IMG/VR virus record: IMGVR_UViG_3300032296_003307
Coordinates: 1-64,000 of that record
Length of the DNA stretch: 64,000 bases
Strand: one strand, 5' to 3'
Below are positions 4,596 through 31,872 of the stretch, one piece after another (position 1 is the stretch's first letter; each line of letters begins with the position of its first letter). Both the position numbers and the translations under genes were made by a program. The notes under the pieces are model-generated. The model was not told where the DNA came from, searched no databases, and saw only the letters and a program-made list of their open reading frames with translations.

Positions 4596-4629
4596 CCTGT
4601 TTTCCATATATTTATGGCAAACTATATCC

Positions 4630-5391
4630 ATGATTGGACTGATCTCTTTATTAAAAGAAATAGAAGGAACCCCAAAAGCTATTTTTATGGCTGGCCCAGC
4701 AGGATCAGGAAAATCTTATATATCTTCTAAATTAGTCCCCTCAGATTTTACAACAATAAATGTAGATGATACTTATGAGGAATTACTTAAATCCTCAGGT
4801 ATTGGAATGAAATTAGCTCAAATGTCACCTGATGAATTAAAAAAAGCAGGTGAGTTAATGGGTCAAGCAAGAAAAGCTACTGATGTAAAATATCAAGATG
4901 CTCTCAAAGATGCTAAAAATCTTATAATTGATAGTGTAGGAGGTTCTCCTAAAACATTACTTAAGAAAAAACAACAATTAGAGGATTTAGGTTACACTAC
5001 GTTTATGATAATGACTTATGTTTCGCCTATTACCTCACTAGAGCGTAATATGAAGCGAGATAGATCATTGTTACCAAGTATCGTGCTTCGTTCTTGGCGC
5101 GATGTAAATAAAAATATAGACACATATAAGCAAGCTTTTGGAGCCGACTTTGTATTATTGAATTTAGATCCTGATGATGCTAATAAAAACTTTGATGAAG
5201 AATACATTTATCAAACATTTATTAAACCTTTAGGACAAATAGGTAAAGAAAAATCACCTGAGGAAATAGCAAAATCCAAAGCAGAAACCCAACAAATCTA
5301 TTCAGATATAAAACAAACTCTTAATACACAACCTGAGTTTGATACTTTAGAATCAGCCCAACAAAAAATTACTAATTTTATAAACAAATGA
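4630..5391 (+). CDS. P-loop kinase (zeta-toxin/AAA_33/PNK-kinase-like) with leader peptide
   Basis: Walker A GPAGSGKS, INVDD, Walker B LIID, SLERNxxR lid. Leader MIGLISLLKE. Confidence 0.8.
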   Translation: MIGLISLLKEIEGTPKAIFMAGPAGSGKSYISSKLVPSDFTTINVDDTYEELLKSSGIGMKLAQMSPDELKKAGELMGQARKATDVKYQDALKDAKNLIIDSVGGSPKTLLKKKQQLEDLGYTTFMIMTYVSPITSLERNMKRDRSLLPSIVLRSWRDVNKNIDTYKQAFGADFVLLNLDPDDANKNFDEEYIYQTFIKPLGQIGKEKSPEEIAKSKAETQQIYSDIKQTLNTQPEFDTLESAQQKITNFINK

Positions 5392-6065
5392 AGTTATTAA
5401 ATCTTTTATTAAAAATTTATAAAGAAGAATATGATTTGAATCTTAAAGAGGGTTTAATCAAAACTACTAATATTGGTAAAACTATAAACTTACTCAGAGC
5501 ATCTTTTGATTTTGGGTTTGAATATCAAAGAGATGATAATACATTTGAAGTAACCTTTCATCAAATTAATAAAAATATTTTAGATAATTTTTTAAAATAT
5601 GTTAATAATTTAGGTTGGTTTCCTTCTTATATTTCTACTCCAGCATATAAAGGAAAATGGAGAGAAAATACATATGATGATTATTTGTCTAAAATTAGGT
5701 TTGAAGCAAAATTTGATGAAGAAATAGTTGAAAAAATACCCCAAATTCTTTATCATATCACTCCAACTCAAAATGTTAATAAAATTTTAAAAATAGGATT
5801 AGTACCTAAATCAAGATCAAAAGTATCTTATCATCCTGAAAGAATTTATTTAGGAAAATCTATCGGTGGTATAGAAAAATTAGCTCCTCAAATGAATTTA
5901 AGAACTGGAGATAAAAATTTTACAATATTAAAAATCAACACTGATCTAATTCCTGGAGAATATTTAAGATTATATACTGATCCTAATTATAATAAAGAAG
6001 CATTTTACACTTTAAATAACATTCCTCCACAAGCAATAGAAAAAATTAAAGACATACAATTATGA
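5388..6065 (+). CDS. ADP-ribosyltransferase-fold protein (Tpt1/KptA-like)
   Basis: LYHITPTQNVNKILKIGLVPK, RIYL, ILKIN and C-terminal NIPPQAI pattern. Confidence 0.65.
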   Translation: MKLLNLLLKIYKEEYDLNLKEGLIKTTNIGKTINLLRASFDFGFEYQRDDNTFEVTFHQINKNILDNFLKYVNNLGWFPSYISTPAYKGKWRENTYDDYLSKIRFEAKFDEEIVEKIPQILYHITPTQNVNKILKIGLVPKSRSKVSYHPERIYLGKSIGGIEKLAPQMNLRTGDKNFTILKINTDLIPGEYLRLYTDPNYNKEAFYTLNNIPPQAIEKIKDIQL

Positions 6066-6424
6066 AAAAATTAATAGATTTACTTAACGAAATCGAAGAA
6101 AAAGACAACAAAAAAGTTGTTAAAGAAGAACCATCTGTAGTAGATGAGGTAGGAAAATTCTTTGTAGTTAAAAAACCTAAAAAAGGTATGACCAAAGAAG
6201 ATATGGTATATGAAGCTACTGTATTCGATGAAGTAAAAATGGAAGAGGTAAAAGGTGTTTACAAAAACAAATCAGAAGCCAATCGCCACGCCACTGCATC
6301 TTTAATGGAATATGAAAAACAACTTCAGGAAATGGAAGCCGCTGTAGAAGAGTTCCGTGCCATGAAGAAAGATATTGAAGCAAAAAGAAAAGAAGCAGCC
6401 GAAAAAGTTAAAAGTCTTAAATGA
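6062..6424 (+). CDS. Hypothetical protein with leader peptide and C-terminal coiled coil
   Basis: MKKLIDLLNE leader; ATGA overlaps with both neighbours. Confidence 0.7.
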   Translation: MKKLIDLLNEIEEKDNKKVVKEEPSVVDEVGKFFVVKKPKKGMTKEDMVYEATVFDEVKMEEVKGVYKNKSEANRHATASLMEYEKQLQEMEAAVEEFRAMKKDIEAKRKEAAEKVKSLK

Positions 6425-9400
6425 TAGATTCTATCCTAGAGATATTATTTGAGGAAGACTACACAAAAACAGTAGCCATTTATGGTGGTGGTTTTAAACC
6501 ACCTACCAAAGGTCATTTTAATGTTGTTGAAAAAACATTACAAGAATTACCTGATATAGATGAAGCAATTGTTTTTGTTGGTGGAGGAGTTAGAGATGGT
6601 ATTACCCAAGAAGAATCCTTAACCATTTGGAATATCTACAAAAAATATCTTTCAGATAAAGTTACTATAGAACCATCTGTAGCTCCTGTTAAATCAATTT
6701 TAAATTACGCTAAAGAACATCCTGAAGAAAAAGTTTATTGGATTTTAGGTGCTCGTGAAGGTAATGAAGAAGATTTGACAGATATTGCCAACAGAACTAA
6801 ATCAATTGAAAAATATCCTAACATTGAGGTTAAAGTGATTACCTCCTCAGGTGGTGTTAGTGGTACTAAAACAAGAAAAACCTTATTAGACAATAATAAA
6901 GAACAATTTTTCCATCTCATTCCAGATATAGAGGAAAAAGAGGAAATATGGAACATACTTTCTCCAAAGGTTCAAGAATCATTAGAGGAAGGTTTTATAG
7001 AAAATGCACAAGAAAATATGAAAAAGTTGCTTTTAGCCATTAAACAAGAAGGCAGAGAAACAAGAGATGCCTTTAAGTTAGTTTTAAAAGCAGCCAAAGG
7101 TGAAATCCAACTGACAGACGAACAAAAGAAACAAATTGGAGATCAACTAAAAGATGTTTTGAAAATGGTTGGTTTAGTTAGTATTGCTGTTCTTCCTGGT
7201 AGTTTTATTGTTGGAGCTTTAATTAAAATTTTTAAAGCAGAACGTTTAGTATTTCCTTCATCATTGATGAATGAAGACAAACCCTCAGGTGATTCTAATC
7301 CTTTAGGATTAAAATATATTGATATTTGGCATGAGGGTCAATACAAAGCTGAAGAAAATAAAACAGAAGAAGCTATAAAATTAATGATTCAAGCTGCTAA
7401 AGAAGCTGAAGAATTAGAAAGTATTGGAGAAGCAAATTATTATAAAGGAACTATAGCTTGGTTAAAAAAAGATTATAATACTGTTAACAAATACATTAAT
7501 GATAAATTTGTTAAATCAACAGGTAATGATGAAGTATTAAAACGACTTTTAAATAATAAAGATAAATCTTATAAAGAGGCATATAATACTTCTATAAATG
7601 AAGTTGGAGAAGCAAGTGCTAAAGTTTATCCTTTTTCTTCTGATAAAGATCCTAGTGAAATAATAAATTTAGCTAAAAACTTTTTTAGTAAAGGAACCTC
7701 ATCTAAAGTTTATCAACGAGTTTTAACATATACTTTTTCTACAGATAAAGCCGATTACGTTGTTAAATTTAACATAGAGGTAGAACGTCAAACATATGTA
7801 AACTTCTCTAAAAACCCTGATTGGAAACCAGGTCCTCCATATAAAACATATGCTTCTGTTGGTTTCAATATTGAGGGAGAGGAAGAAGATAAAGATACTA
7901 ATTTAAATGAACAGTTTTCTGTTTTATCTACAGTAACAAAAATTATTTTTGATTTTATTGACAAAATAAATGAAGCTGAAGGTAATTTAGTGTCATTAGT
8001 AATTGCTCCTAAAAGTGATACTGGTGAAGAATCATCATTGAATTCTAAACGAGGTAGATTCTACACAGCATACATTCAAAAGAATTTATCCAAATACCCA
8101 GAATATAAAACCAGAGATGGTAAAAATAATTCAGGGGGTGAATATGTAGAAATTTATAAAACAAACAGTGTAAATGAATTAGAAGAAGGTAGAAAAAAGA
8201 AACCTGATCCTAAAAAAGGAACAGGCAAAAAACCTGAAGGATCAGGTCGTAGATTATACACAGATGAAGATCCTAAAGATACTGTTAGTATTAAATTTAA
8301 AACCAAAGAAGATATAGTTGATACTTTAAATAAAAAACAATTTAAAGCTAAATCACATGCTCGTCAATCTCAAATTATTAATTTAATTCATCAACGAGTA
8401 AGAGCCGCTTATGGTAAAGCAAAAGATCCTGAGGTAAAAGCAAGATTAAAACGTGCTTTAGATTATATTGAGTCTCGTAAAGAGGCATCAAAAGAAAAAA
8501 CAGAACGTTTACGTAAAATGAAAGAAGCATCCGACCCACAAGCAGGAACAGCTTTACCTTATGGTTCAGGATTTGCTCCTGTAAAAGAAAGTTACCAATT
8601 TAAAGTTTCCGATAAAAACTATGATGAAGAAGATAATTCTTTAATTTCAGTTGATTATAAATTTTCTACCCCAGATAATGATTATAGAGTTGAATTTTAT
8701 TCAGGTGAATACAATCCTGAAGCTAAAATATTTGATGTTTCTTTTGGAATAGACAAATATGGTTCTAAAATTGATACTTTCCAAATGACAGGTGAAGGTA
8801 ATGCTTTAAGTATTCTTAAAACTATTGTTGATATTATTAAAGATTTTACAAAACGTTTTGAAGTAAATAAGTTAGTTATTGATCCAACAAGCGAAAAACG
8901 TGGAAAAATTTATTCAATGATATTAAAATCATTACCCCCAGACATCTTAAATAAAGTAGAACTTATAAATGAAAATGATTTATTTGGTTTAAATAAATTG
9001 GATAAAGATTTTGTAAAAGAATCCAAAGAATTAAACGTTCAAGATTTAGCTTATAAACAAATACCAGGACTATTAGAAAAAGGAATTAATTATGGATTAG
9101 CCCATTTTAGAGGATTCATGAAATCTTCTTACAAATGGAGTGGTCCAAAGGATAGAAATGATTTTTTTGATTTTATAGAAAATATAAAAGGAGAAATAAA
9201 ACGAGTTCCTTTATCATCTATAAAACCTTCTCAATCAGGTAATGATTACAAAAATTCCTCTTCAGAATATGAAGCAGAAGAATTTCAAAAAATATTAGAT
9301 GGAGAAAAAAATATAGAGGATCATAGGAAAGAAGATTTTTATCCTATATTAGTTAATAAAAGAGATAATAAAATATTAGATGGAAATCATAGACATTATG

Positions 9401-10434
9401 CTTTATCAGCAATAAATTCACCCTATGCTGTAGTATTATATGTAGATGTTCCTAAACAATATATAAATGAAAAATCAGATCCTTTTGGTTTAAATAAATT
9501 TGCAAAAGACTTTGTAAAAGAAGTTTTTGAAGAAACTTGGAATCCCAAAGACTCGTTCGTATCTTTATCCGTATTTATGAAAGACAATGGAATGAACATA
9601 ACCCCATTGCCTAAAATTAAGGTTATATCAGACGACAAAGAAAATGCGTCGCATCTTTTGGGTAAGACTGCTTACTACAATCCAGCAGATAAGTCAATTA
9701 CTCTTTATACCTTTGGAAGGCACCCAAAAGATGTTTTACGCTCTTTTGCTCATGAAATGGTTCACCACGAACAAAATCTTAATGGTACTTTAGGAAATGT
9801 TAGTACTACTAACACAAATGAAGATGGTCATTTAGATAAACTTGAGAGAGAAGCATATGAAAAAGGTAATATCATGTTTAGAAATTGGGAAGATAGTATT
9901 AAGAGTTCAGTAAATGAAATATATTTTTTAGATATTCCTAAATTCAATTATCCTAAAACATTTGTGGATAAATTACGTAAATCCTTAAATGAAATTACTT
10001 TATCAAAAGATAATGCTGTGGAAATAAATGGAGATTTAACTAATGGAAAATTTCAAGTAGGAGATATAATATATGTGTATTCTATAAAAAATATACCAAA
10101 TCCATATAAAGATGAAGGGGAATTTTATAATGTTTCTTTTTATCCTGAAGATAATATAATTTCTGAACCTTTAGAAGGAAAAGAAAATTATGTTAAAATT
10201 TTATCAACAATGTTCAAAATAATATCTGATTTTTCCGAAAAAGAAAAACCAAAATATATAGGAATATCATCTATGGATAACGACAACAATAAAAATTACC
10301 ATAGAGTATATGCCAATTTAACAGATAATAAATTTAACAGAATACCAGGATACTTTAGAAAAGATGTTAGTCTAGGATTTGATACTCCTCAAGGAAAAGG
10401 TAGATTTGTAGTATTAAAAAGAAAAGATGTATAA
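6421..10434 (+). CDS. 1337-aa modular polyprotein: HxGH-type nucleotidyltransferase, several unknown modules, ParB/Srx-like domain, HExxH metallopeptidase
   Basis: GGFKPPTKGHF (6421-6990), ILDGNHR (ParB module 9022-9471), AHEMVHHEQ...EREAY (9535-9918). Modules are separated by LEE/LMNE/SINE/SVNE/MKE/VKE/LINE/YINE/SLNE. Confidence 0.8.
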   Translation: MIDSILEILFEEDYTKTVAIYGGGFKPPTKGHFNVVEKTLQELPDIDEAIVFVGGGVRDGITQEESLTIWNIYKKYLSDKVTIEPSVAPVKSILNYAKEHPEEKVYWILGAREGNEEDLTDIANRTKSIEKYPNIEVKVITSSGGVSGTKTRKTLLDNNKEQFFHLIPDIEEKEEIWNILSPKVQESLEEGFIENAQENMKKLLLAIKQEGRETRDAFKLVLKAAKGEIQLTDEQKKQIGDQLKDVLKMVGLVSIAVLPGSFIVGALIKIFKAERLVFPSSLMNEDKPSGDSNPLGLKYIDIWHEGQYKAEENKTEEAIKLMIQAAKEAEELESIGEANYYKGTIAWLKKDYNTVNKYINDKFVKSTGNDEVLKRLLNNKDKSYKEAYNTSINEVGEASAKVYPFSSDKDPSEIINLAKNFFSKGTSSKVYQRVLTYTFSTDKADYVVKFNIEVERQTYVNFSKNPDWKPGPPYKTYASVGFNIEGEEEDKDTNLNEQFSVLSTVTKIIFDFIDKINEAEGNLVSLVIAPKSDTGEESSLNSKRGRFYTAYIQKNLSKYPEYKTRDGKNNSGGEYVEIYKTNSVNELEEGRKKKPDPKKGTGKKPEGSGRRLYTDEDPKDTVSIKFKTKEDIVDTLNKKQFKAKSHARQSQIINLIHQRVRAAYGKAKDPEVKARLKRALDYIESRKEASKEKTERLRKMKEASDPQAGTALPYGSGFAPVKESYQFKVSDKNYDEEDNSLISVDYKFSTPDNDYRVEFYSGEYNPEAKIFDVSFGIDKYGSKIDTFQMTGEGNALSILKTIVDIIKDFTKRFEVNKLVIDPTSEKRGKIYSMILKSLPPDILNKVELINENDLFGLNKLDKDFVKESKELNVQDLAYKQIPGLLEKGINYGLAHFRGFMKSSYKWSGPKDRNDFFDFIENIKGEIKRVPLSSIKPSQSGNDYKNSSSEYEAEEFQKILDGEKNIEDHRKEDFYPILVNKRDNKILDGNHRHYALSAINSPYAVVLYVDVPKQYINEKSDPFGLNKFAKDFVKEVFEETWNPKDSFVSLSVFMKDNGMNITPLPKIKVISDDKENASHLLGKTAYYNPADKSITLYTFGRHPKDVLRSFAHEMVHHEQNLNGTLGNVSTTNTNEDGHLDKLEREAYEKGNIMFRNWEDSIKSSVNEIYFLDIPKFNYPKTFVDKLRKSLNEITLSKDNAVEINGDLTNGKFQVGDIIYVYSIKNIPNPYKDEGEFYNVSFYPEDNIISEPLEGKENYVKILSTMFKIISDFSEKEKPKYIGISSMDNDNNKNYHRVYANLTDNKFNRIPGYFRKDVSLGFDTPQGKGRFVVLKRKDV

Positions 10435-10975
10435 ACTTAAATTAACAGACATATACAAACAAATTAAAGAAGAGGAAACACAACCTCAATCAGCTCAACA
10501 ATATACAATTTATTGTGATATGGATGGAGTTATTGCTGACTTTGATAAACGATTTAAAGATTTAAATCCTGAACATTTATCTGCTGCCCAATACCAAACA
10601 AAATATGGTATAGAAAAGTTTTGGGATTTTATAGATGAAGAAAATAAAGTAAAATTCTGGGTTGGTATTCCTTGGATGCCTGATGGAAAAGAACTTTGGG
10701 ATTATATTAAAAAATACAAACCAACCTTGTTATCAGCCCCTTCTAAAAAACCACAATCTCGTTTAGGAAAAAGATTATGGGTTAAAAACAATATTCCAGG
10801 AACTCCTTTGATTTTAGCAGCAGCTGATAAAAAACAGAATTATTCTGGAGGAAATAAAATACTTATCGACGACAGAAAAGATAATGTTGACCAATGGCGC
10901 TCACAAGGTGGTATTGGGATAGCACATACCTCTGCTCAAGATACAATTAAACAATTACAAAATTTAGGATTATAA
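10427..10975 (+). CDS. HAD-family 5'(3')-deoxyribonucleotidase-like phosphatase
   Basis: IYCDMDGVIADF (DxD), LLSAP, K..W, ILIDDR motifs. Confidence 0.88.
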   Translation: MYKLKLTDIYKQIKEEETQPQSAQQYTIYCDMDGVIADFDKRFKDLNPEHLSAAQYQTKYGIEKFWDFIDEENKVKFWVGIPWMPDGKELWDYIKKYKPTLLSAPSKKPQSRLGKRLWVKNNIPGTPLILAAADKKQNYSGGNKILIDDRKDNVDQWRSQGGIGIAHTSAQDTIKQLQNLGL

Positions 10976-10980
10976 TTATT

Positions 10981-11607
10981 ATGTATAGATTAAGAGAAAA
11001 TGAAGAAGATGCTCAATCAAGACTTGCCCTTGATTTTGACATTATTTTAACACCAAAAACCAGTGTTGAAGATGCTGTAAAAGCTTTAGAAAACATTGAT
11101 AACTATGGTGCTTATGTTTCTAATATGAGAAATAAAGCATCAATTGAAAAAGCAATAGAAATGCATTTTGGAAACATGGATGATGAAGGTAAAAAAATAT
11201 CACCTGCCAAAAAAGCATCTATTGAAAAACAAAGAGGTGAAAAATTTCCTGTTAAAACAAAACAAGCAATTGATGATTTAGTTAAATCATTAACCAGCAA
11301 ACCAAATCTTTTAAACTATACAGTTAAAGGTAATACTCTTGTTTTCCCTAAAGGAAAAAATCCTTCAAAAGATGTAACCAAAAAAATAATCAAAACTGTA
11401 ATGGACAATGCTGATATTACTTTTTCAGTAAAAGAAAAAGAATCAGTAAGTGAAGATGCAATTACAGATAAAATTAAATCATCTTTTATGTACCAAGTTA
11501 CTGGTGGTAAAAAAGGTGAGCCAATGTCTGCTGGTAAAAAATTACCTGCTAACACTAAAATTAAAAAATCTGAACTAAAAGAAATTATTAAAAATTTCAA
11601 CAAATAA
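10981..11607 (+). CDS. Hypothetical Lys-rich protein
   Basis: 208-aa ORF abutting neighbours in the same operon. Confidence 0.65.
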   Translation: MYRLRENEEDAQSRLALDFDIILTPKTSVEDAVKALENIDNYGAYVSNMRNKASIEKAIEMHFGNMDDEGKKISPAKKASIEKQRGEKFPVKTKQAIDDLVKSLTSKPNLLNYTVKGNTLVFPKGKNPSKDVTKKIIKTVMDNADITFSVKEKESVSEDAITDKIKSSFMYQVTGGKKGEPMSAGKKLPANTKIKKSELKEIIKNFNK

Positions 11608-12179
11608 TGAAAAACCAATCAGTTTTAAAAAAAGAGTTTAAACAGAGAGATGTTCAACGTCTCCGTAACCTTGTTCAAGGCAAGTACGGAGAAAAATCTA
11701 CTGTTGGAACTGGTTATCAAAAAGCAAAAGAATTTCATTCCGAAGGTGATGTTTGGGAAGAGGATGGAAGAACTTGGACTATTAAAAATGGTTTAAAACA
11801 AAACATTACTAAATTAGATAAAGCAAAAGAAGGCATTGTATTGCCTTTGTTTTGTCCTACTTGTTCTCGTACAATGAAACCACATTTGGACAAAAAATGG
11901 TTTGTAATGTATGGACACTGTTTTGATTGTCAAGTGGATTTTGAAGCAAAACTTAAAAAAGAAGGAAAATTAGAGGAATTTGAAAAACAAGTAATAAATG
12001 ACCATTTGGAAGGTACTATCAATGATTTTGAAGCATGGTTTGATGAATTAATTAATTCAAAAGACCAATTCATTACAGAGACAGGCGATATTGAAAAATG
12101 GGATGGTTCCGGTAAAGAGCAGTTGTTAAAATATAAACAAGAAGCATTAGAATATTTAAACAAACAACGAAAAGAATAA
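11607..12179 (+). CDS. Hypothetical protein with CxxC...CxxC zinc-binding motif
   Basis: LFCPTC...HCFDC. Confidence 0.7.
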   Translation: MKNQSVLKKEFKQRDVQRLRNLVQGKYGEKSTVGTGYQKAKEFHSEGDVWEEDGRTWTIKNGLKQNITKLDKAKEGIVLPLFCPTCSRTMKPHLDKKWFVMYGHCFDCQVDFEAKLKKEGKLEEFEKQVINDHLEGTINDFEAWFDELINSKDQFITETGDIEKWDGSGKEQLLKYKQEALEYLNKQRKE

Positions 12180-12796
12180 TGGAAATTACAATGATTACAA
12201 CCATTCTTGTTGCTTTAATTACAGCCGTAATTGGTCCCGCTGTTTTAGAATGGGTTAAAGCAAAATTGAGAAAAAATGAAGACAAAGACTCTTCAGTAAA
12301 AGAAGCAATTGATGTCAATGAATTAGTTGACCATCAATTAGATCAATTGTTAGAGGAATTAGGTTGTGATCGAATTTGGGTTGGACAATTTCATAATGGT
12401 GGTCATTTTTATCCTACAGGAAAATCAATCCAGAAATTTTCTATTTTCTACGAAAAATTAACCCCAAGTACCTCAGCAATCCAACATATATTTCAACAAA
12501 TACCTGTTTCATTATTTCCAAAAGCTTTATCTAAGCTTTACAAAGATGGAGAATTGGCTGTTGTAAATTACAATACTGATGAAACTTATGATTTAAGTAT
12601 GTTTTCTAAAGACTATGGAACCAAATCTTTTTATATGTTAGCCATAGATGATTTGGACGAACATTTCATAGGAGTAATGGGAATTGCATTCAATGATAAA
12701 GAACATAAATTATCCAAAGAAGAATGGATATTTATACGACAGAAAGTAGGGGCGATTGGTTCCCTTTTAACAGACTATTTATACAAGAAAAAATGA
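12179..12796 (+). CDS. Putative holin (T4 gpT-like: N-terminal TM + GAF-like domain)
   Basis: Hydrophobic ITMITTILVALITAVIGPAVL, then a GAF-like region (CDRIWVGQFHNGG...FIGVMGIAF). Confidence 0.6.
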   Translation: MEITMITTILVALITAVIGPAVLEWVKAKLRKNEDKDSSVKEAIDVNELVDHQLDQLLEELGCDRIWVGQFHNGGHFYPTGKSIQKFSIFYEKLTPSTSAIQHIFQQIPVSLFPKALSKLYKDGELAVVNYNTDETYDLSMFSKDYGTKSFYMLAIDDLDEHFIGVMGIAFNDKEHKLSKEEWIFIRQKVGAIGSLLTDYLYKKK

Positions 12797-13548
12797 AAGA
12801 CATAAACAAAATTAAAGAATTTTTCTCTAAACCTTTAGAAGAAGCAAAAAGAGATATTGACAAGATTAAAAAACAATTAGATGCTTTAGGTGTTAAATAT
12901 GAAATGTCAACCACTGATAAAGTTAGACCATTTAAAGTGATTTACAAACCAGTTAATAAATCAGATGAATTTTATGATAAATTTGAAGACATTGTTGATT
13001 TATTTAACTTAAAAAGTTTTGTAAAATCATCAATGAATGAAGCTAAAAAAGAAGATGCCGTTGATACAATTACAATGGATATTCCTTTATTCCTTCGTAT
13101 GTTAGAATATTCAAGAGAAGATGCCTCTCAAGACATGGATTTACATGATGTTACCGAAAAAGCAAATAAATTAGGTAAAGAAAGAGGTATTTTATCCATG
13201 GAAGACTATGAAGAAATTGTAGGTGCTGCCGAAGATATTAACGAACTTTCAGATTATTTTAAACGTAGAAAAGCCCAAGACGATTACGCTGTTAATAAAA
13301 AAGACAAACCAGCAAAACCTTATAATCCCAACTCTTCAGGCAAAACAGACTACATGAAGCGTAGAGAAAAAGAATTAAATGAAAGAATTTCCGAAGCATT
13401 AAATAAAATCAACGAAGAACTTTGCCCTGCTGGTAAAGCATACATTAAAAAAAGAAAAGCAGCTGGTGAAAAATCATCTGCTTACCTTTCAGGTCGTGCT
13501 GTAAAAGTATGTAAAGGCCAAATGTCAGGTAAAGCTAAGAAAAAATAA
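12793..13548 (+). CDS. Modular hypothetical protein (putative head-internal protein)
   Basis: ATG 12793 overlaps the upstream stop. Short modules separated by PLEE/SMNE/DINE/ELNE/KINEE. Confidence 0.7.
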   Translation: MKDINKIKEFFSKPLEEAKRDIDKIKKQLDALGVKYEMSTTDKVRPFKVIYKPVNKSDEFYDKFEDIVDLFNLKSFVKSSMNEAKKEDAVDTITMDIPLFLRMLEYSREDASQDMDLHDVTEKANKLGKERGILSMEDYEEIVGAAEDINELSDYFKRRKAQDDYAVNKKDKPAKPYNPNSSGKTDYMKRREKELNERISEALNKINEELCPAGKAYIKKRKAAGEKSSAYLSGRAVKVCKGQMSGKAKKK

Positions 13549-13838
13549 TGGACTTAATTAGATTACAAGAATTAGTATCTGAATCATTACGCGACTGGTT
13601 TAAAAAAGAAGACTGGGTGCGTATTGATACTCAAGGTAACATTACTGGTCCTTGTGGTACTATGAAAAAGGGTCAAGCAACAACTCGTTGCCTACCTCGT
13701 AAAAAAGCTCAATCATTATCTAAAAAAGAAAGAGCGGCAACTGCCCGCAAAAAAGTAGCTGGTTCTAAAAAAGGAGAACAGTTTGTAAAAAACACAGAAA
13801 AAGCAGAATACAAAAAAGGTACATATCATAAAAAATAA
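13548..13838 (+). CDS. Small basic hypothetical protein
   Basis: LRDWFKKEDWVRI...CG...RCLP basic module after a MDLIRLQELVSE leader. Confidence 0.7.
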   Translation: MDLIRLQELVSESLRDWFKKEDWVRIDTQGNITGPCGTMKKGQATTRCLPRKKAQSLSKKERAATARKKVAGSKKGEQFVKNTEKAEYKKGTYHKK

Positions 13839-13858
13839 CATATTTATACACATATATT

Positions 13859-14827
13859 ATGAAAAAATTTGACTTAAAAAAGATGATAGCTGAAAACAAG
13901 GCTACATTCTTTTCTTCCTTGAACGAAGGATACGATGAATTCAAAAGAGCAGAAAAAGGCTCTAAAGATGTAACCGCTAAAGACAAAGGCGAAGAAGAAG
14001 TTTACGGAGCCGGAGTTAAAAAAGGTGAAGAAATCGAAAAGAAAAAAATGAAAGAAAATTTAGATTCAAGTTATGACGATTTATATGATTTTGTAGACCA
14101 AAAAATGGTTGAAGGTGATGAAGAAGCCGAAATGCTATTAAACTCAAACCCAAGTTATGATGATTTATATGATTTTGTAGACCAAAAAATGGTTGAAGGT
14201 GATGATGAAGCAGAAGCATTATTAAATAAAATAAATAATATTAATGAAAATAAATCTTCAAAAATGAAAATGTCTGAATTAAAAGCCAAAATCAAAGAAA
14301 TGGTTTTAGCTGAAATGACTTTAGATGTTGATAATATGGAAGATGCCCCAGAATCAGAAGTTGATTTCTTGACTGAATTAGAAGCAATGTTAGATGAGGC
14401 TGATAAAGACACAGAAAAAGATACAGCCGAAACCGATGCTGATGTAACAATAGACGATACAGAAACTATTGATACTGAAACAACAACCGAAGTAGATCCT
14501 AATGTAAAAGCAGTACAAGATGCTTTAACACAAGCTCAAGCAGCTGCTCAAAAATTAGGTGATAAAAAATTAACAGATCAAATTGGTAACACAATTACCT
14601 TCTTCACTCGTACTCACGTTGTTGAAAAACCAGGTGGAGCAGTAGCAGAAAACTTAAATGAAGGTAGAGCAACTTTACCAAAGTTTAAACAATATTTCAA
14701 AATCATGATTGAAAACCAACCAAATGATGTTTTAGATTTAATTATGGATCTTCTTGAACATGATGGTAAAAATTTTGATGAATGGACAAGTAATATTGCT
14801 GATGATATAATAGATACTTTAGGTTAA
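13859..14827 (+). CDS. Acidic modular protein (putative prohead core/internal protein)
   Basis: Preceded by ATATTTATA; linkers SLNE/MKE/NINE/NLNE; internal 28-aa duplication. Confidence 0.7.
   Translation: MKKFDLKKMIAENKATFFSSLNEGYDEFKRAEKGSKDVTAKDKGEEEVYGAGVKKGEEIEKKKMKENLDSSYDDLYDFVDQKMVEGDEEAEMLLNSNPSYDDLYDFVDQKMVEGDDEAEALLNKINNINENKSSKMKMSELKAKIKEMVLAEMTLDVDNMEDAPESEVDFLTELEAMLDEADKDTEKDTAETDADVTIDDTETIDTETTTEVDPNVKAVQDALTQAQAAAQKLGDKKLTDQIGNTITFFTRTHVVEKPGGAVAENLNEGRATLPKFKQYFKIMIENQPNDVLDLIMDLLEHDGKNFDEWTSNIADDIIDTLG
14067..14226. repeat. 84-bp tandem duplication (SYDDLYDFVDQKMVEGDxEAExLLN x2)
   Basis: Near-identical copies start at 14067 and 14151. Confidence 0.95.
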
Positions 14828-14904
14828 AATAAAAAGATAATAATAAACCTTTAGTTAATGAATCAGTATTCCCAATGTTAAAGAAAATTTTAAAATAAAA
14901 GTAT

Positions 14905-15075
14905 ATGAACACACAAGAAATCTTTGAAAAAATTGAAGCTCTTTATGAGACATTCAAAGCAGAACATGCTGGAAAATCTAAAGCAGCTCACGGTCGTGCT
15001 AGAAAAGTCCTAGGTGAAATCAAGAAATTGGTAGCCGAATACCGTAAAGCCTCTATTGACGAGGACAAAAAGTAA
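14905..15075 (+). CDS. Histone H1-like Hc1-family small protein (Bacteroidota type), missing from the ORF track
   Basis: MNTQEIFEKIEALYETFKAEHAGKSKAAHGRARKVLGEIKKLVAEYRKASIDEDKK (56 aa). KAAxxRARK...xRKxS signature. Confidence 0.75.
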   Translation: MNTQEIFEKIEALYETFKAEHAGKSKAAHGRARKVLGEIKKLVAEYRKASIDEDKK

Positions 15076-15080
15076 TTAAA

Positions 15081-16109
15081 ATGGCCAAACGCGATTTAAC
15101 CCCAGAGGAATTAGCTAAAGTTGAAGCAAAAATGAAAACTTTTATGGCTAATAAAGACTCTTGGGTTAAACGCTATGGTAAAGACGCAGAAAAAGTAATG
15201 CGAGGTCGTGCCATCACAAGCGTAAAAAAAGAAACCGAAACAATGAATAAACAAAAATTAAAAGAATTAGTTAGAAAATCTTTAATGAACGAAGCCGATA
15301 TTGAAGTTGGTGCCGAAGAATATTTTGGAGAAAAAGACTTATCCAAAGCATCAATGATGTTGGACGATCTCGAAACAAAATTAAAAAATCATGATTGGTT
15401 TTATATGATGTCTGATGATAACAGAGCTTATACTAAAGGCTCTTTAGAACAACAATCCATCAGAAACATTATGAAATCTCTTGAAGACATGGGATATGGT
15501 GAGGATGCAAAATCACTCTTCAACCAATATGCTCCTAATGGTCCAGGAGGAAGTACCTTAAAAATGAAAGAAGCTAAAGGTAAAGACATGGATAAAGATG
15601 GAGACATCGATTCAGATGATTACTTGGCTGCTCGTGATGCTGCTATTAAAAAAGCAATGCAAAAAGAAGACATTGATTTAGGTCACGAAGACAACGAACC
15701 ACATATGATTAAAGGCGAATTATACCAAATTGGTAAATACGCTATGGAATTATATGCTGCTTTAGAAGAATTAGAAGAAATGGGTGGTGAATATGATTTT
15801 CCTGCTTGGTGGCAATCAAAAATTACTACAGCCAAAAACATGATATCAGGTGCTAAACATTATTTAGAATTTGAAATGAATGAACCAAAAATTGATGCTG
15901 CTGTAGATGCTTTAACAGGTGAAGAATACCATGAAGGTGAGCCAATGATGGAAAAAAAGTTAACCAAAGCAGAAAAAGCCAAAAAAGAAGATATAGTTAA
16001 AGGAATGAAAAAAAGCTTTAAAGGTGATGAATCAGCAATGTATGCTATTGCCACTGCCAAAGCTAAAAAAGTAGCTGAAACTTTAGCTAAAAAACTAAAA
16101 AATGACTAA
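15081..16109 (+). CDS. Modular hypothetical protein with EF-hand-like loop
   Basis: Modules separated by LMNE/KMKE/MQKE/PMME; DMDKDGDIDSDDY calcium-loop pattern. Confidence 0.7.
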   Translation: MAKRDLTPEELAKVEAKMKTFMANKDSWVKRYGKDAEKVMRGRAITSVKKETETMNKQKLKELVRKSLMNEADIEVGAEEYFGEKDLSKASMMLDDLETKLKNHDWFYMMSDDNRAYTKGSLEQQSIRNIMKSLEDMGYGEDAKSLFNQYAPNGPGGSTLKMKEAKGKDMDKDGDIDSDDYLAARDAAIKKAMQKEDIDLGHEDNEPHMIKGELYQIGKYAMELYAALEELEEMGGEYDFPAWWQSKITTAKNMISGAKHYLEFEMNEPKIDAAVDALTGEEYHEGEPMMEKKLTKAEKAKKEDIVKGMKKSFKGDESAMYAIATAKAKKVAETLAKKLKND

Positions 16110-16587
16110 AGACGAGTTAAAAGAAAAAATCAAAGTACTTGTTCAACAAGTATATAAACCTGATACTCTACAGGTACAGGATAAAATTTCTTTAGATGCT
16201 CCCAAATTTCCAGTTTTAGAAAAATTCCCTACCTTAAAACAAGTTATTGTTAATTTATTAACAAACCAATACGAAATATTTGTAAAAGACATTCAATGGG
16301 TTGCTCCAAAGCCAACTACTTTCCGAGTTATACTTGCCAATGGAGAACCTTTTACGTTAATTTATACTCCAAGAAGCTGGGTGGCTCAAGTAGAAGGTAA
16401 AAAATACTACTTGTTAAACTTAAGCGAAGAAGAATCAGCAACCGAAGCCATTTCAAGAATATTAGCCTATGGGACGCAAGAAGAAACCACACCAGAAGAA
16501 GGATCAGCAGGAGGAACCGAAACAGGCGGTGAAACAGGCGGAGGTGAAGAAGAAACTCCTGCACCTGAAGAAACACCATCAGCTTAA
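16102..16587 (+). CDS. Hypothetical protein with acidic Gly/Glu/Thr tail
   Basis: 161-aa ORF in operon. Confidence 0.65.
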   Translation: MTKDELKEKIKVLVQQVYKPDTLQVQDKISLDAPKFPVLEKFPTLKQVIVNLLTNQYEIFVKDIQWVAPKPTTFRVILANGEPFTLIYTPRSWVAQVEGKKYYLLNLSEEESATEAISRILAYGTQEETTPEEGSAGGTETGGETGGGEEETPAPEETPSA

Positions 16588-16589
16588 TT

Positions 16590-17702
16590 ATGGACGCCTT
16601 AGATATATTTTTCAAAAAGTTCTCTTATAAATTCCCTAAAGGATACCCTGACATGAATAATGAACAGGATAGAGTATTATTGGTAAATTTATTAGAGCAA
16701 ATAGGATTCCCTACTTACAATACTATTATAGTGAAAGAATCAGCCCAAGACATTAAAAATGTTCTTATTGATGCCGGTTACAGTCCTGAAGATATCGTAA
16801 TCAAGAGCAGTAAACAAATACGTTTATTAACAAAAGGTAATGAACGTAAATCCACTATGGATAAACTTGTTCAAGATTTAGGTTATATTTATGACCCTAA
16901 TTTTAAAGGTTCTTCTTTAGGAGCTATTATAGCAGATGACGGAACAGCCATTATTGTTAAGCCAAAAGAAAAACAAGGTACTGGTTCTGCTGGTTTAGAT
17001 AATGAGCAAATGTTGGTTGATTCTATTAATCAATATACCGAAGAAGGTCCTATTAAAGTAGTATTTAAAGGAAGTAATAAAACTATTTCTTTTGATAATG
17101 TAACCAAAGCAAAATCAGTAGGAACAGCAACAGCAGGAAATAAAAAATCAGATGTAGCTCTATATTCTGGTGATAAAATAATTGGTAATCTTTCTCTTAA
17201 AAAGGCAAATGCCTCTATGTGGGAAAGTGCTGATAAAAGATACAAAGAATTAGTTAACAAACTTTCCGAAAAATTAATAAACAATCCCTTTCCTACTATT
17301 GGATTAAGAGAAACAGATAAAAAAGATATTTATCGTTTATATAATCCTAAAACAGGAACAGATTTAAGTGGAATTATTATTACAGATCTTCCGGACAATG
17401 AAAATGAATCAATTGTTTTTGGAACCGATGATCCTAAAGTTCAAGTAATTAAACATACATTCCAACCAAATGATTTTTCTTTCAATAATGGAGTTCTAAC
17501 AATTAATTCAGGCACTACATTTACTGATTTATCTGATATTGAAGGTACAGAATATGAACCTATTTTAGTTTTAAGACATGATGTTACTCGTACAGCAAGT
17601 AAAGGTTTAAGACCAATTGTTTACAATAAAAGCCATGGATACAGAGATGGTGAAATAAAAGGATCTCAAGCCGAGTTAACTTATGATCAAGCTATCTCTT
17701 AA
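16590..17702 (+). CDS. Putative restriction-endonuclease-fold (PD-(D/E)XK) nuclease
   Basis: E(QML)...KKSDVAL...NLSLKK pattern typical of the REase-fold catalytic core. Confidence 0.5.
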   Translation: MDALDIFFKKFSYKFPKGYPDMNNEQDRVLLVNLLEQIGFPTYNTIIVKESAQDIKNVLIDAGYSPEDIVIKSSKQIRLLTKGNERKSTMDKLVQDLGYIYDPNFKGSSLGAIIADDGTAIIVKPKEKQGTGSAGLDNEQMLVDSINQYTEEGPIKVVFKGSNKTISFDNVTKAKSVGTATAGNKKSDVALYSGDKIIGNLSLKKANASMWESADKRYKELVNKLSEKLINNPFPTIGLRETDKKDIYRLYNPKTGTDLSGIIITDLPDNENESIVFGTDDPKVQVIKHTFQPNDFSFNNGVLTINSGTTFTDLSDIEGTEYEPILVLRHDVTRTASKGLRPIVYNKSHGYRDGEIKGSQAELTYDQAIS

Positions 17703-17713
17703 TATTTATAACT

Positions 17714-18520
17714 ATGGATTTAAAAAAATTAATTAAAGAAGTATTAGAGGATAAAGATTGCTGCAAAGCAAAAAAACCTACTAAAGCGCCTATATTAAAC
17801 GAAAGCTTAGCTCCGCATGAGATATTGTCTGAGGGATTAAAATATCATATAGACAATAAAAAACCGCTTACCGAGCATGTTTACCGTGCTGGTTCAACTA
17901 ATTATTTCCATTTATGGGCTGAAGCCAGAGCACTATATTCTCGTGGTATTCTAGATTTTTCAGGTGATGATTTAGCAATTTTAACTGAAACCCATTTAGG
18001 TGAATTTGGTTACATAACTGAAATAGAAATAGGAGACAAAGTTAAAGCATCTAAAGAATATGGTGGATTATCAGGTGAGGTAGTAGATATTAGAGGTTCT
18101 TTTATTGTTGTTAAAACAAAAGAAGGAAATCAATCATATCATGAATCTGATTTAAAAGTATTAAACAAAGAAGCTAAAAAAGTTCCATTAGATTTTATAA
18201 TGGAAGAACTAGAAGAAGAATTAGACGAAGCTAAATCTAAACCAAAAAAGAAAAATCCCCCAATTGGAAAACCAATGCGTGGTGGTTCTAAAAAGTTTTA
18301 TGTTTATGTAAAAGCACCTGGTGGTAAAATTAAAAAAGTATCATTTGGTCAAGCAGGTATGTCTGCTAAAATTAATAACCCTGAAGCACGTAGAGCATTT
18401 GCTGCTAGACACGATTGTAAAAATAAAAAAGATAGAACAAAAGCATCTTATTGGTCTTGTCGTTTACCTCGTTATGCTAAATTATTAGGATTAAAGTCTA
18501 ATTTTTCAGGATTTTGGTAA
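17714..18520 (+). CDS. Modular hypothetical protein (SH3/KOW-like insert, basic C-terminal module)
   Basis: Leader MDLKKLIKEVLE; IGDKVK...GEVVDIRG; KKVSFG...RRAFAARHDC...YWSC. Confidence 0.7.
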   Translation: MDLKKLIKEVLEDKDCCKAKKPTKAPILNESLAPHEILSEGLKYHIDNKKPLTEHVYRAGSTNYFHLWAEARALYSRGILDFSGDDLAILTETHLGEFGYITEIEIGDKVKASKEYGGLSGEVVDIRGSFIVVKTKEGNQSYHESDLKVLNKEAKKVPLDFIMEELEEELDEAKSKPKKKNPPIGKPMRGGSKKFYVYVKAPGGKIKKVSFGQAGMSAKINNPEARRAFAARHDCKNKKDRTKASYWSCRLPRYAKLLGLKSNFSGFW

Positions 18521-18849
18521 TGATTAAATTTTCAAATATATTAAATGAGGTAAAAAAAGTTAAAGAAACTTTTGAAGAATTTGCTGGAATTAGAGGTAAA
18601 GGTGCTGCTAAAATAGCCGAAAATGCAGAAAAAAAAGGTGGTTTAGCACTTTTAACTTGGCACCATTTTAAGGTGAAAGCTCCCTACTACAAAAAAGCAA
18701 ATGAAGGTAAACTTGATTTAAAAGAAGCCGAAAAAGAATTTAAAGAAACATATAAAAAAATATCCTTAAACATGAGTCAAATCGAATTTCAAAGAGAGGT
18801 TGGTCGTTTAGAGGTTTTAGGTGAGCTTTTAATTAGAAATAAAAAGTGA
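18520..18849 (+). CDS. Hypothetical protein with leader peptide
   Basis: ATG 18520 overlaps the upstream TAA; leader MIKFSNILNE. Confidence 0.7.
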   Translation: MIKFSNILNEVKKVKETFEEFAGIRGKGAAKIAENAEKKGGLALLTWHHFKVKAPYYKKANEGKLDLKEAEKEFKETYKKISLNMSQIEFQREVGRLEVLGELLIRNKK

Positions 18850-19367: not shown

Positions 19368-19378
19368 AATATATTAAC

Positions 19379-20507: not shown

Positions 20508-20562
20508 CTTATAGACCGATTCATAGCTTCTTATATATTTTATATATTTATAATAAAATACA

Positions 20563-20661
20563 ATGATAGGAATCTATAAAATTACAAATCCTGAAGGTAA
20601 AATTTATATTGGTTTATCTAAAAATATTGAAAAACGTTTTAAAAATCATAAAAATTTATAA
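20563..20661 (+). pseudogene. Truncated GIY-YIG homing endonuclease (32-aa remnant)
   Basis: MIGIYKITNPEGKIYIGLSKNIEKRFKNHKNL*: perfect GIY-YIG-R N-terminus then a stop. Preceded by ATATTTATA. Confidence 0.85.
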
Positions 20662-20668
20662 TTTAATA

Positions 20669-31269: not shown

Positions 31270-31872
31270 ATGAAACAAGTATTAATTGAAACCATACCAT
31301 TTACAGTCTCACGTGAACAATTACACGAGGGTCTTAAAGCATCTTCAGGCAATCCTTTGGTTGAAGGAATACTTGCTACAGCCGAGGTAAAAAATGGTAA
31401 TGGTCGTTATTATCCAAAAGAGTTATGGGAAAGAGAAATTGACAAGTATCAACAAATGATTGATAGTAATACTTCAACAGGTGAGCTAGATCACCCTGAT
31501 TCCTCAATTATCTCTTTAAAAAATGTTTCTCACATCATCAGAAAATGCTGGTGGGATGGTGATAAAGTAATGGGTAAAATAGAAATTTTACCTACAGTGT
31601 CAGGCAACATATTAAAAGCCCTTATTGATAATGGAGTTACAGTAGGTGTATCCTCTAGAGGAATGGGTTCTCTAAAACAAATTGGAGAAACATTAGAGGT
31701 ACAAGATGATTTTGAATTATTGTGTTGGGACTTTGTATCAACACCTTCAAATCCAGGTTCATATATGACATTGGTTAAAGAAGGTAAAGAAGTTCAAGCA
31801 TACAAATATGGTAAAGTAAATTCTTTACTAACTGAGATCCTTTGTGCAAACGGATCTTGCCCAATATTTTAA
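31270..31872 (+). CDS. gp21: Prohead core protease (T4 gp21-like)
   Basis: KNGNGRYYP, GELDHP, VSHII, GVSSRGMGS, WDFVSTPS. Confidence 0.95.
   Translation: MKQVLIETIPFTVSREQLHEGLKASSGNPLVEGILATAEVKNGNGRYYPKELWEREIDKYQQMIDSNTSTGELDHPDSSIISLKNVSHIIRKCWWDGDKVMGKIEILPTVSGNILKALIDNGVTVGVSSRGMGSLKQIGETLEVQDDFELLCWDFVSTPSNPGSYMTLVKEGKEVQAYKYGKVNSLLTEILCANGSCPIF

What the first reader, a model, noticed from the sequence alone, without database searches (positions are those of the whole stretch)
6421..10434. 1337-aa polyprotein of about ten modules joined by protease-site-like linkers
Seen: modules bounded by Glu linkers: HxGH-type nucleotidyltransferase (6421-6990, QESLEE); hydrophobic helical-hairpin module (to LMNE 7275); TPR-like module (to SINE 7602); alpha/beta module (to SVNELEE 8187); basic RRLYTDEDPKD module (to KMKE 8526); short peptide (to PVKE 8589); alpha/beta module (to LINE 8973); ParB/Srx-like ILDGNHR (9022-9471, YINE); HExxH zincin (9535-9918, SVNE); final alpha/beta module (after SLNE 9993). 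Inference: the prohead protease cuts this into separate effectors inside the head, so one targeting leader delivers many proteins. This resembles viral polyprotein processing and is unusual for a dsDNA phage.
Basis: partly seen in the sequence, partly recalled or inferred. Interest (0 to 1): 0.87.

Follow-up and report, generated by a model that had tools for sequence, protein, structure and literature searches.

The report
Phage cargo polyprotein with protease-site linkers
One gene of a giant T4-related phage encodes a 1337-residue chain of about nine small proteins whose linkers match the cutting site of the phage's own head-maturation protease, so it probably loads a reshufflable kit of proteins into the virus head for injection; this rests on sequence comparison, not experiment.

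Summary
About 30 orthologues from related uncultured phages range from 361 to 1337 aa. They gain and lose whole modules at these linkers, nearly always just after an aliphatic-x-Glu tripeptide.

The window encodes a T4 gp21-family prohead protease, and T4 gp21 cuts after L/I-x-Glu. The known T4 capsid-protein cleavage site aligns with LVTE in this phage's capsid protein. The motif sits at the leader and all junctions but is depleted inside modules: 9 seen against 21 expected.

The N-terminus carries an 11-residue leader resembling the T4 capsid targeting sequence. The same modules, when encoded as separate genes, carry their own 10-residue leader ending in Glu.

The likeliest reading is a head-targeted polyprotein cut by the prohead protease into small injected proteins. 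These include a nucleotidyltransferase, a basic protein, a ParB-like module and an IrrE/selecase-like zincin. Cleavage and packaging are inferred, not shown, and self-processing by the embedded zincin is the main rival.

The concept overlaps the published "polyvalent proteins", so this is a new variant of a known kind.

The parts
4608..4615 (+). ATATTTAT motif 15 nt before the first gene of the operon that contains the polyprotein; the same motif precedes the portal and head-core genes (candidate late promoter)
   Evidence: 29 + strand copies (33 on both strands against 14.7 expected), mostly 4-30 nt upstream of ORF starts
6421..6453 (+). N-terminal leader (aa 1-11, ends ILFE; also ILE at aa 7); candidate capsid targeting sequence
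   Evidence: orthologue leaders MNKLTKFLIKE, MNQLTKFLIGE; compared with the T4 10-aa CTS (PMC9026906)
6454..6978 (+). M1: HIGH-type nucleotidyltransferase (TKGH and SGTKTR motifs), the constant N-terminal module; ends VQE, then SLEE (6979-6990)
6991..7275 (+). M2: basic helical module with one strongly hydrophobic segment (aa 250-268); ends LMNE
   Evidence: [LIVM]xE at 0.06 of expectation in orthologues
7276..7602 (+). M3: helical cassette, absent from all 30 orthologues and present in one other family member; ends SINE
7603..8178 (+). M4: DUF6934-like module, copy 1; ends SVNE, followed by LEE (8179-8187)
8188..8526 (+). M5: basic module (pI 10.2, 13 kDa); very abundant elsewhere as a separate gene with its own 10-aa leader; ends KMKE
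8527..8589 (+). M6: 21-aa spacer peptide (ASDPQAGT...PVKE)
   Evidence: lowest pLDDT in the multi-module model
8590..8973 (+). M7: DUF6934 module, copy 2 (Pfam E 2.2e-9); ends LINE
8974..9021 (+). Spacer peptide NDLFGLNKLDKDFVKE; its DNA is a 39-nt direct repeat with 9484-9522
9022..9471 (+). M8: ParB/Srx-like cassette (PSQ and DGNHR motifs); ends YINE
9472..9522 (+). Spacer peptide KSDPFGLNKFAKDFVKE (second copy of the repeat)
   Evidence: pLDDT 55-66 against over 90 in the M9 core
9523..9918 (+). M9: minimal zincin (HEMVH plus downstream Glu), IrrE/selecase-like, the constant module; the final SVNE is present only when another module follows
9919..9993 (+). M10: 25-aa peptide always found with M11; ends SLNE
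9994..10434 (+). M11: DUF6934-like module, copy 3, C-terminal, with no Glu linker at its end (stop included)
31270..31872 (+). T4 gp21-family prohead protease, the proposed processing enzyme; has LIE at aa 5-7 as T4 gp21 has LIE-9
   Evidence: PMC9026906
33381..33392 (+). LVTE (aa 57-60 of the major capsid protein, counted from ATG 33213), aligned with the T4 gp23 cleavage site LTE65
6062..6424 (+). Syntenic upstream ORF with conserved leader MKKLIDLLNE
10427..10975 (+). Syntenic NT5C-like gene with conserved leader ending QIKE; in another phage it is fused into the polyprotein after VMNE

Best explanation
This is a head-targeted cargo polyprotein of a T4-superfamily jumbo phage, a variant of the 'polyvalent protein' theme.

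Proposed steps, all inferred:
1. The gene is expressed with the head genes.
2. The 11-residue N-terminal leader docks the 153-kDa chain into the prohead core, as the T4 capsid targeting sequence does.
3. When the gp21-like protease (31270-31872) is activated, it cuts after Glu at about 16 aliphatic-x-Glu sites.
4. This removes the leader and four short spacer peptides and frees nine proteins of 10-22 kDa.
5. The freed proteins stay in the head and enter the host with the DNA.

The nine proteins are a nucleotidyltransferase, a hydrophobic module, a helical module, three DUF6934-like modules, a basic DNA-binding-type module, a ParB-like module and an IrrE/selecase-like zincin.

The conserved linkers and spacers also act as recombination joints, so related phages carry different module sets between a constant first module (M1) and a constant zincin (M9).

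Shown here: the anatomy, the cassette exchange at the linkers, the motif statistics and the homology of the protease and capsid site. Inferred: targeting, cleavage, retention and injection.
For: (1) The protease is a gp21 homologue: phrog_207 E 2e-57, and about 33% identity to Tequatrovirus gp21. T4 gp21 cuts after L/I-X-Glu (PMC9026906).

(2) The T4 gp23 site LTE65|A aligns with LVTE|T here and IVSE|A in phage immuto.

(3) All module junctions carry [LIVM]-x-E. In about 30 orthologues with about 25 architectures, homology breaks fall right after that Glu.

(4) The linker tetrapeptide exists only where a further module follows. M9 ends ...SIKN-stop when last, and ...SIK(S/N)xVNE when internal. 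M11 ends KRKDV-stop here, but KRKDE-SLNE when internal elsewhere.

(5) Across the wider family, 73 of 79 internal M9 copies are followed within 16 aa by [LIVMFY]xE, against 33% of control windows.

(6) The motif is depleted inside modules: 9 against 21.0 +/- 4.0, with 0 of 2000 shuffles as low. It is in excess in the scaffold-like ORF, 33 against 16.

(7) Leaders. The orthologues keep a leader ending [LI]-x-E at residue 10-11. Among stand-alone M5 genes, 112 of 120 have sequence ahead of the conserved M5 core, with consensus M-I-K-L-[LI]-D-I-L-x-E; Glu is at position 10 in 79, and about 26 more read ILE at 7-9. The syntenic neighbours have conserved leaders. In the window, 15 of 70 ORFs have such a leader against 3.1 expected, including the scaffold-like, protease and head-cluster ORFs.

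(8) No module starts with Met.

(9) The operon is headed by the same ATATTTAT motif as the portal and head-core genes.

(10) Cassettes in relatives are typical injected or counter-defence enzymes, most as weak Pfam hits: ADP-ribosyltransferase-like, pol-beta NTase, NT5C, Maf and 2H/Acb1-like.
Against: There is no direct evidence of cleavage, of presence in virions or of injection. No proteomics was found for the only cultured relative.

The gene sits among nuclease, kinase and nucleotidase genes, not in the head module.

An apparently active zincin is embedded in every family member and could be the processing enzyme.

[LIVM]xE is a short motif. M1 and M4 interiors are not depleted of it.

A few junctions lack a Glu site, namely the Zn-ribbon cassette joined to the DPFGL spacer, and two others.

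A hydrophobic membrane-like segment (M2) is an odd passenger for a capsid interior.

The multi-module structure model was too poor (pLDDT 43) to show disordered linkers convincingly.

The orthologue junction counts are not independent events, because many junctions are inherited.
Confidence: 0.55

Rival explanations
1. It is a polyvalent protein processed by its own zincin (M9), as proposed in general for polyvalent proteins. M9 would cut the linkers in cis or trans, either in the cytoplasm before packaging or after injection, and the prohead protease would play no part.
For: M9 is present in every orthologue and is the best conserved module, at 66-96% identity. HExxH and the downstream Glu are invariant. 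The confident model has the N-helix, three-strand sheet and two C-helices described for polyvalent-protein MPTases, and it resembles the site-specific peptidases IrrE/PprI and selecase (PMC5512222).
Against: The sites are defined on the P side (Glu at P1, aliphatic at P3) with a variable P1' residue. That is the hallmark of gp21-type proteases rather than a typical zincin pattern. The same motif marks the capsid-protein site homologous to T4's and is in excess in the scaffold-like protein. M9 is also very common as a stand-alone protein of 110-150 aa with nothing to process, with 3889 such hits, which points to an effector role of its own.
Confidence: 0.2
2. It is an uncleaved multi-domain cytoplasmic protein. 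It would be a beads-on-a-string enzyme of nucleotide or NAD metabolism or counter-defence, whose linkers merely happen to end in Asn/Lys-Glu, and it would not be packaged.
For: Its neighbours are a PD-(D/E)XK nuclease, a zeta/AAA_33-like kinase and NT5C. Immuto's relative is annotated as NMN adenylyltransferase and lies near primase and exonuclease genes. Some known polyvalent proteins (N4 vRNAP, ArdC, TraC1) act uncleaved (PMC5512222).
Against: It does not explain several observations: Glu is kept at P1 across unrelated module pairs; the linker is added only when a module follows; the motif is avoided inside modules; and the same modules carry a 10-aa leader ending in Glu when they are encoded alone.
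Confidence: 0.15
3. It is an artefact: a chimeric assembly, or neighbouring genes fused by sequencing errors.
For: The sequence comes from a metagenome assembly.
Against: Uninterrupted orthologous ORFs occur on about 30 independent contigs from many samples. They always lie between the same two flanking genes, and their modules lack start codons.
Confidence: 0.01

Closest known systems
Polyvalent proteins of phages and conjugative elements (Iyer, Burroughs, Anand, de Souza, Aravind 2017; PMC5512222)
   Same: Many biochemically unrelated domains sit in one phage polypeptide. A zincin-like metallopeptidase is the hub domain, and ParB-like, NTase and ART-type domains also occur. The architectures are extremely mosaic. 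The proteins were predicted to be delivered with the DNA and released by peptidases, with an explicit analogy to RNA-virus polyproteins.
   Different: Here every junction is a defined aliphatic-x-Glu site that matches the phage's own gp21-type prohead protease, and the motif is avoided inside modules. A T4-CTS-like leader is present. The zincin does not match Pfam's polyvalent-protein MPTase model; it is closest to IrrE/M78 and selecase. The 2017 paper proposed self-processing by the zincin, and assigned a processing role to assemblin-like peptidases only where they are fused into the protein.
T4 internal proteins IPI-III and Alt: CTS-targeted, gp21-processed, injected head proteins (PMC9026906)
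   Same: The protease is of the gp21 family. There is a leader of about 10 residues ending L/I-x-Glu. Cleavage is after Glu. The cargo is small and basic or enzymatic. One orthologue has an ART-like cassette (a weak Pfam hit), and Alt is an ART. Non-homologous cargo proteins share the leader.
   Different: T4 cargo proteins are separate genes, each with its own CTS and cut once or twice. Here up to nine cargo units hang on one leader and are separated by internal sites and spacer peptides. There is no sequence homology to the T4 IPs or Alt.
Inner-body and ejection proteins of phiKZ, 201phi2-1 and SPN3US, cut at S/A-X-Glu by gp175/gp245-type proteases (PMC9026906, PMC10052503)
   Same: These are jumbo phages in which many head proteins are cut after Glu, some at several sites, and the fragments are kept and ejected.
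   Different: Those substrates are not chains of independent enzymes. The phage lineage, motif and proteins all differ.
Phage P1 DdrB / Dar head proteins
   Same: A ParB-like domain plus a C-terminal zincin in a head-packaged, proteolytically processed anti-restriction protein (as described in PMC5512222).
   Different: No homology was detected. There is a single cleavage, no Glu-linker system and no gp21-type protease.

Membership tests
Polyvalent proteins (PMC5512222) | 2-15 domains of disparate biochemistry in one polypeptide of a phage or plasmid | tested here: met
   Nine modules, including an NTase, a zincin, a ParB-like module and DUF6934 x3. Relatives add ART-like, pol-beta NTase, NT5C, Maf and 2H/Acb1-like domains, most as weak hits.
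Polyvalent proteins (PMC5512222) | Zincin-like MPTase hub domain: N-terminal helix, three-stranded sheet, helix with HExxH, helix with the Glu ligand | tested here: met
   The M9 model has pLDDT 84 with topology H-E-E-E-H(HExxH)-H. Its fold neighbours are selecase and IrrE/PprI. No hit to Pfam's polyvalent MPTase model was listed at E <= 1, so this is a different clade.
Polyvalent proteins (PMC5512222) | Packaged in the virion and delivered with the DNA | not testable with these tools
   Only indirect support: the leader, the protease-site linkers and the upstream motif shared with head genes.
T4-type CTS cargo processed by gp21 | The phage encodes a gp21-family prohead protease | tested here: met
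   ORF 31270-31872: phrog_207 E 2e-57, tblastn to Tequatrovirus gp21 at about 33% identity.
T4-type CTS cargo processed by gp21 | N-terminal propeptide of 10-19 aa ending in L/I-X-Glu | tested here: met
   The leader ends ILFE at aa 11 and is conserved as ...FLIKE...FLIGE in orthologues. This is a sequence pattern only; function was not tested.
T4-type CTS cargo processed by gp21 | Actual cleavage after Glu by the prohead protease | not testable with these tools
   Motif placement, its avoidance inside modules and the aligned capsid-protein site are consistent with it.
T4-type CTS cargo processed by gp21 | Homology to T4 IPI-III or Alt | tested here: not met
   No Pfam or PHROG hit to IP or Alt families. 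tblastn against 50,697 phage records hit only the immuto phages.
HIGH-signature nucleotidyltransferases (NMNAT / PPAT, Pfam CTP_transf_like), module M1 | (H/T)xGH motif and SxTxxR motif; Pfam score above the gathering threshold | tested here: inconclusive
   TKGH and SGTKTR are invariant in 23 orthologues. The Pfam score is 14.5 bits against a cut-off of 21. In the wider family, 17 of 67 relatives hit at E < 1e-3. The best PDB hit is NaMNAT at E 0.013. The substrate is unknown.
ParB/Srx superfamily, module M8 | ParB/Srx fold with the conserved DGxHR-type Arg pocket | tested here: inconclusive
   The PSQ and DGNHR motifs are invariant in homologues. There is no Pfam hit and no PDB sequence hit. 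The top fold hit of a low-confidence model is a pNOB8 ParB-N domain, E 1.5e-3.
DUF6934 (Pfam PF22028), modules M4, M7, M11 | Pfam match above the gathering threshold | tested here: met
   M7 scores 37.9 bits against a cut-off of 27. M4 and M11 are distant paralogues by blastp and alignment. The function is unknown.

The most novel reading that the evidence does not exclude
This would be a natural plug-and-play cargo system in T4-related aquatic phages. One capsid-targeting leader carries any number of cassettes, each ending in a prohead-protease site. The conserved spacer peptides (ASDPQAGT...PVKE and xDPFGLN...FVKE) would serve at the DNA level as recombination joints that swap cassettes between genes and phages. 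At the protein level they would serve as protease sites or docking sites. The injected arsenal could then be recombined as freely as tail-fibre tips, and the same module could move between 'own gene with own leader' and 'bead in the polyprotein'.
Probability: 0.4. Interest if true: 0.8.

Novelty: new variant of a known kind. Interest (0 to 1): 0.68.

Why it matters
If true, it links two lines of work that have stayed apart. One is the polyvalent proteins, which were predicted by computation and whose processing has hardly been tested. The other is the well-studied T4 pathway of capsid targeting sequence plus gp21.

It gives polyvalent-protein processing a concrete, testable rule: cut after aliphatic-x-Glu at every junction, by the prohead protease.

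It also shows how a phage can load many small enzymes with one targeting signal, and how that load is reshuffled in nature. About 25 architectures were seen among 30 close relatives. There are 2504 representative clusters carrying the zincin module and at least 7992 stand-alone copies of the basic module.

The module set is a catalogue of candidate early-acting host-takeover or counter-defence proteins from uncultured aquatic phages. The leader-plus-linker grammar could also be used for protein packaging in phage engineering, as the T4 CTS already is.

Tried and rejected
- Fragment-based alignments for structure prediction (A4, A7) were misaligned by MAFFT and were dropped.
- The multi-module AlphaFold run (aa 587-1166, 20 sequences) gave mean pLDDT 43. 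It was used only for the position of the confidence minima. Its fold search is treated as weak.
- PDB sequence-profile searches found nothing for M9 or the DUF6934-like modules. M8 gave only spurious hits.
- PHROGs gave one unannotated family.
- Only the four records of Flavobacterium phage immuto among 50,697 GenBank phage records share any part of the protein.
- A literature search for immuto showed no sign of virion proteomics; the papers were not read.
- The plain T4 late-promoter motif TATAAATA is mostly on the opposite strand. The + strand motif is ATATTTAT.
- Internal translation starts at module boundaries were considered and rejected, because no module begins with Met.
- An assembly artefact was rejected because of the many independent contigs.
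- The padloc and ncbifam libraries were not run.

Full report
**What is there.** The window is the first 64 kb of a 268,739-bp IMG/VR contig, about 31% G+C, with almost all genes on the + strand. It encodes the following head genes:
- a large terminase (25030-26646);
- a T4 gp20-type portal (26674-28587);
- a T4 gp21-family prohead protease (31270-31872; phrog_207 E 2e-57, about 33% identical to Tequatrovirus gp21);
- an acidic scaffold-like ORF (32081-33172);
- a gp23-type major capsid protein (true start probably ATG 33213).

The nearest cultured phage is Flavobacterium phage immuto, with 53% capsid-protein identity.

**Are the modules real units?** I fetched about 30 orthologous loci from IMG/VR. 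The orthologue always lies between a roughly 125-aa ORF and an NT5C-like gene, but its length runs from 361 to 1337 aa with about 25 different architectures. Modules are present or absent as whole cassettes, in a fixed order: M1, then (M2), variable cassettes, (M5-M6), variable cassettes, M9, then (M10-M11).

Examples:
- In L009, M2 is joined directly to M4 (...SSLMNE|VGEAS...), so M3 is an exact insertion.
- In L007 and L009, M6 is joined directly to M9 (...APVKE|KNDPFGLN...).
- In other family members, M5 or M6 is joined directly to the M8 core (...KLKE|EKELNVQD..., ...PVKE|SKELNVQD...).

M8 also occurs in 275-aa mini-polyproteins of other phages with the same two boundaries.

By my tally, most junctions have an aliphatic residue at P3 and Glu at P1, once the true starts of M5 (after LEE| or VKE|) and of the M9 core (after FVKE|) are recognised. 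The exceptions are the Zn-ribbon-like cassette and two others joined to the DPFGL spacer without a Glu; that spacer ends in its own FVKE site.

These junction counts are not independent events. The many different upstream partners of the same downstream module are independent.

**The linker belongs to the junction, not to the domain.** When M9 is the last module the protein ends ...NWEDSIKN-stop. When a module follows, an extra (S/N)-V/L-N-E is appended. M11 ends ...KRKDV-stop here, but ...KRKDE-SLNE where it is internal in another protein.

In a library of 1.84 billion representatives, the M9 profile finds 2504 proteins of 144-1421 aa. Of 79 internal M9 copies, 73 are followed within 16 residues by [LIVMFY]xE, against 33% of control windows. 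P3 is Leu or Ile in 69 of the 73.

**Fit to the prohead protease.** T4 gp21 cuts C-terminal to Glu after L/I-X-E, and the T4 internal proteins carry N-terminal capsid targeting sequences of 10-19 residues that end in such a site (PMC9026906).
- The T4 gp23 site (LTE65|A) aligns with LVTE|T in this phage's capsid protein and IVSE|A in immuto's.
- The protease here begins MKQVLIE, like T4 gp21's LIE-9.
- The polyprotein has only 27 [LIVM]xE sites, of which 18 sit at the leader or at or next to junctions.
- Module interiors hold 9 against 21.0 +/- 4.0 expected from shuffles, and 0 of 2000 shuffles were that low.
- The other 53 ORFs tested run above expectation (311 against 246). The scaffold-like ORF has 33 against 16, and ORF 28622-29479 has 17 against 6.6.
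- In orthologues the depletion is strong for M2 (0.06 of expectation), M5 (0.16) and M9 (0.33), but absent for M1 and M4.

This is the pattern expected of cargo that must survive a Glu-specific protease everywhere except at its joints.

**The leader.** The protein starts MIDSILEILFE. Orthologues start MNKLTKFLIKE, MNQLTKFLIGE and similar, always with [LI]-x-E at about residue 10-11 and ahead of the first strand of M1. The same leader heads a short family member that lacks M1.

The decisive comparison is M5. As a separate gene it is extremely common: 7992 small proteins at 81-94% identity. Of the 120 listed, 112 have sequence ahead of the conserved M5 core, with consensus M-I-K-L-[LI]-D-I-L-x-E. 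Glu is at position 10 in 79, and about 26 more read ILE at positions 7-9. Inside the polyprotein the same module has no leader, only a linker.

The two syntenic neighbours also have conserved leaders, MK(K)LLDLLNE and MYKL..YKQIKE, each followed by a variable spacer. In one family member, NT5C is fused into the chain after VMNE. In the window, 15 of 70 ORFs carry such a leader against 3.1 expected, including the scaffold-like, protease and head-cluster ORFs. These leaders match the T4 CTS in length, in hydrophobic positions 4, 7 and 8, and in Glu at position 10. That is a resemblance, not homology.

**How the cassettes move.** The two DPFGL spacers that flank M8 are a 39-nt direct repeat, 90% identical and 501 nt apart. 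M6 and the DPFGL spacer share an (A)SDP start at which some orthologues are joined. The conserved linker and spacer sequences are therefore plausible recombination joints. This is inference.

**What the modules are.**
- M1 keeps TKGH and SGTKTR and is weakly similar to NaMN adenylyltransferase and PPAT.
- M9 modelled well with 83 sequences (pLDDT 84, pTM 0.77). The spacer part scored 55-66 and the core above 90.
- M9's topology is that described for polyvalent-protein zincins. Its neighbours are selecase and IrrE/PprI in the PDB (probability 0.95-0.96, E about 0.05). In BFVD they are IrrE-N-like and SprT-like phage proteins, many inside large multi-domain proteins.
- M9 is also widespread as a stand-alone small protein.
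- M4, M7 and M11 are DUF6934-like.
- M5 is basic, with pI 10.2.
- M8 is ParB-like by motif and by one weak fold hit.
- Relatives carry ART-like, pol-beta NTase, NT5C, Maf, 2H/Acb1-like and Imm5-like cassettes, most as weak Pfam hits.

**Expression context.** An ATATTTAT motif has 29 copies on the + strand. Both strands together hold 33 against 14.7 expected. It lies 4-30 nt before the starts of the portal, head-cluster and many other late-looking genes. Its first copy (4608-4615) heads the gap-free operon that runs into the polyprotein. This suggests, but does not show, co-expression with head genes.

**Verdict.** Self-processing by M9 (about 0.2) and no processing (about 0.15) remain open.

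The idea of phage polyproteins released by peptidases is published (PMC5512222). What is new here is the defined Glu-linker grammar matched to a gp21-type protease, the single CTS-like leader, the motif avoidance inside modules, and the exact cassette exchange at the linkers. I rate it a new variant of a known kind.

Noticed in passing
window + strand, e.g. 13840, 17702, 21186, 26646, 28598, 30641, 37470, 43584, 48954, 49400, 52194, 52773, 56434: A conserved motif (A)ATATTTATAAC lies 4-30 nt upstream of many ORF starts, with 29 + strand copies. It is a candidate late promoter or initiation signal, and it is the reverse complement of the T4 late -10 box TATAAATA.
   Followed up: partly
window 29472-30410: This head-cluster ORF carries QLDE-ISSIASNSFFTSGGEGENH, which mimics the capsid-protein segment just after its predicted cleavage site (LVTE-TNTISSNSFYQSGGQGENW). 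It also carries GFKPVKE, which resembles the end of spacer M6.
   Followed up: no
window 4630-21059: This is a cluster of ORFs with T4-CTS-like leaders of about 10 residues ending in Glu (starts 4630, 6062, 13548, 13859, 17714, 18520, 19379, 20820). They are possible further head-packaged proteins. ORF 4630 (zeta/AAA_33-like kinase) has 1 [LIVM]xE against 3.9 expected.
   Followed up: partly
window 13859-14827: An acidic ORF with the leader MKKFDLKKMIAE, a second site FSSLNE at aa 19-24, and an internal duplicated segment of about 30 aa (SYDDLYDFVDQKMVEGD...). It looks like an internal or scaffold-type head protein.
   Followed up: no
window 32081-33172 and 28622-29479: Both ORFs hold a large excess of [LIVM]xE sites (33 against 16.2, and 17 against 6.6), as expected of core proteins that are degraded to small peptides. 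The first is very acidic, with MDEA-type repeats.
   Followed up: partly
P0305-P0424 (stand-alone relatives of window 8188-8526): The basic module M5 is an extremely abundant and conserved small phage protein in metagenomes: 7992 hits at 81-94% identity. Some sources name it 'FtsN' or 'MerR regulator', apparently wrongly.
   Followed up: partly
window 33213-34976: The major capsid protein is 587 aa. The PHROG capsid profile matches only its C-terminal roughly 260 residues, so the protein carries roughly 190 residues more than the profile ahead of the matched core.
   Followed up: no
L009:5091-5717: The orthologue on this contig carries an extra 209-aa cassette with a weak ADP-ribosyltransferase (Tox-ART-HYD1) match, E 7e-5. 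This recalls the T4 Alt protein, which is head-packaged.
   Followed up: no
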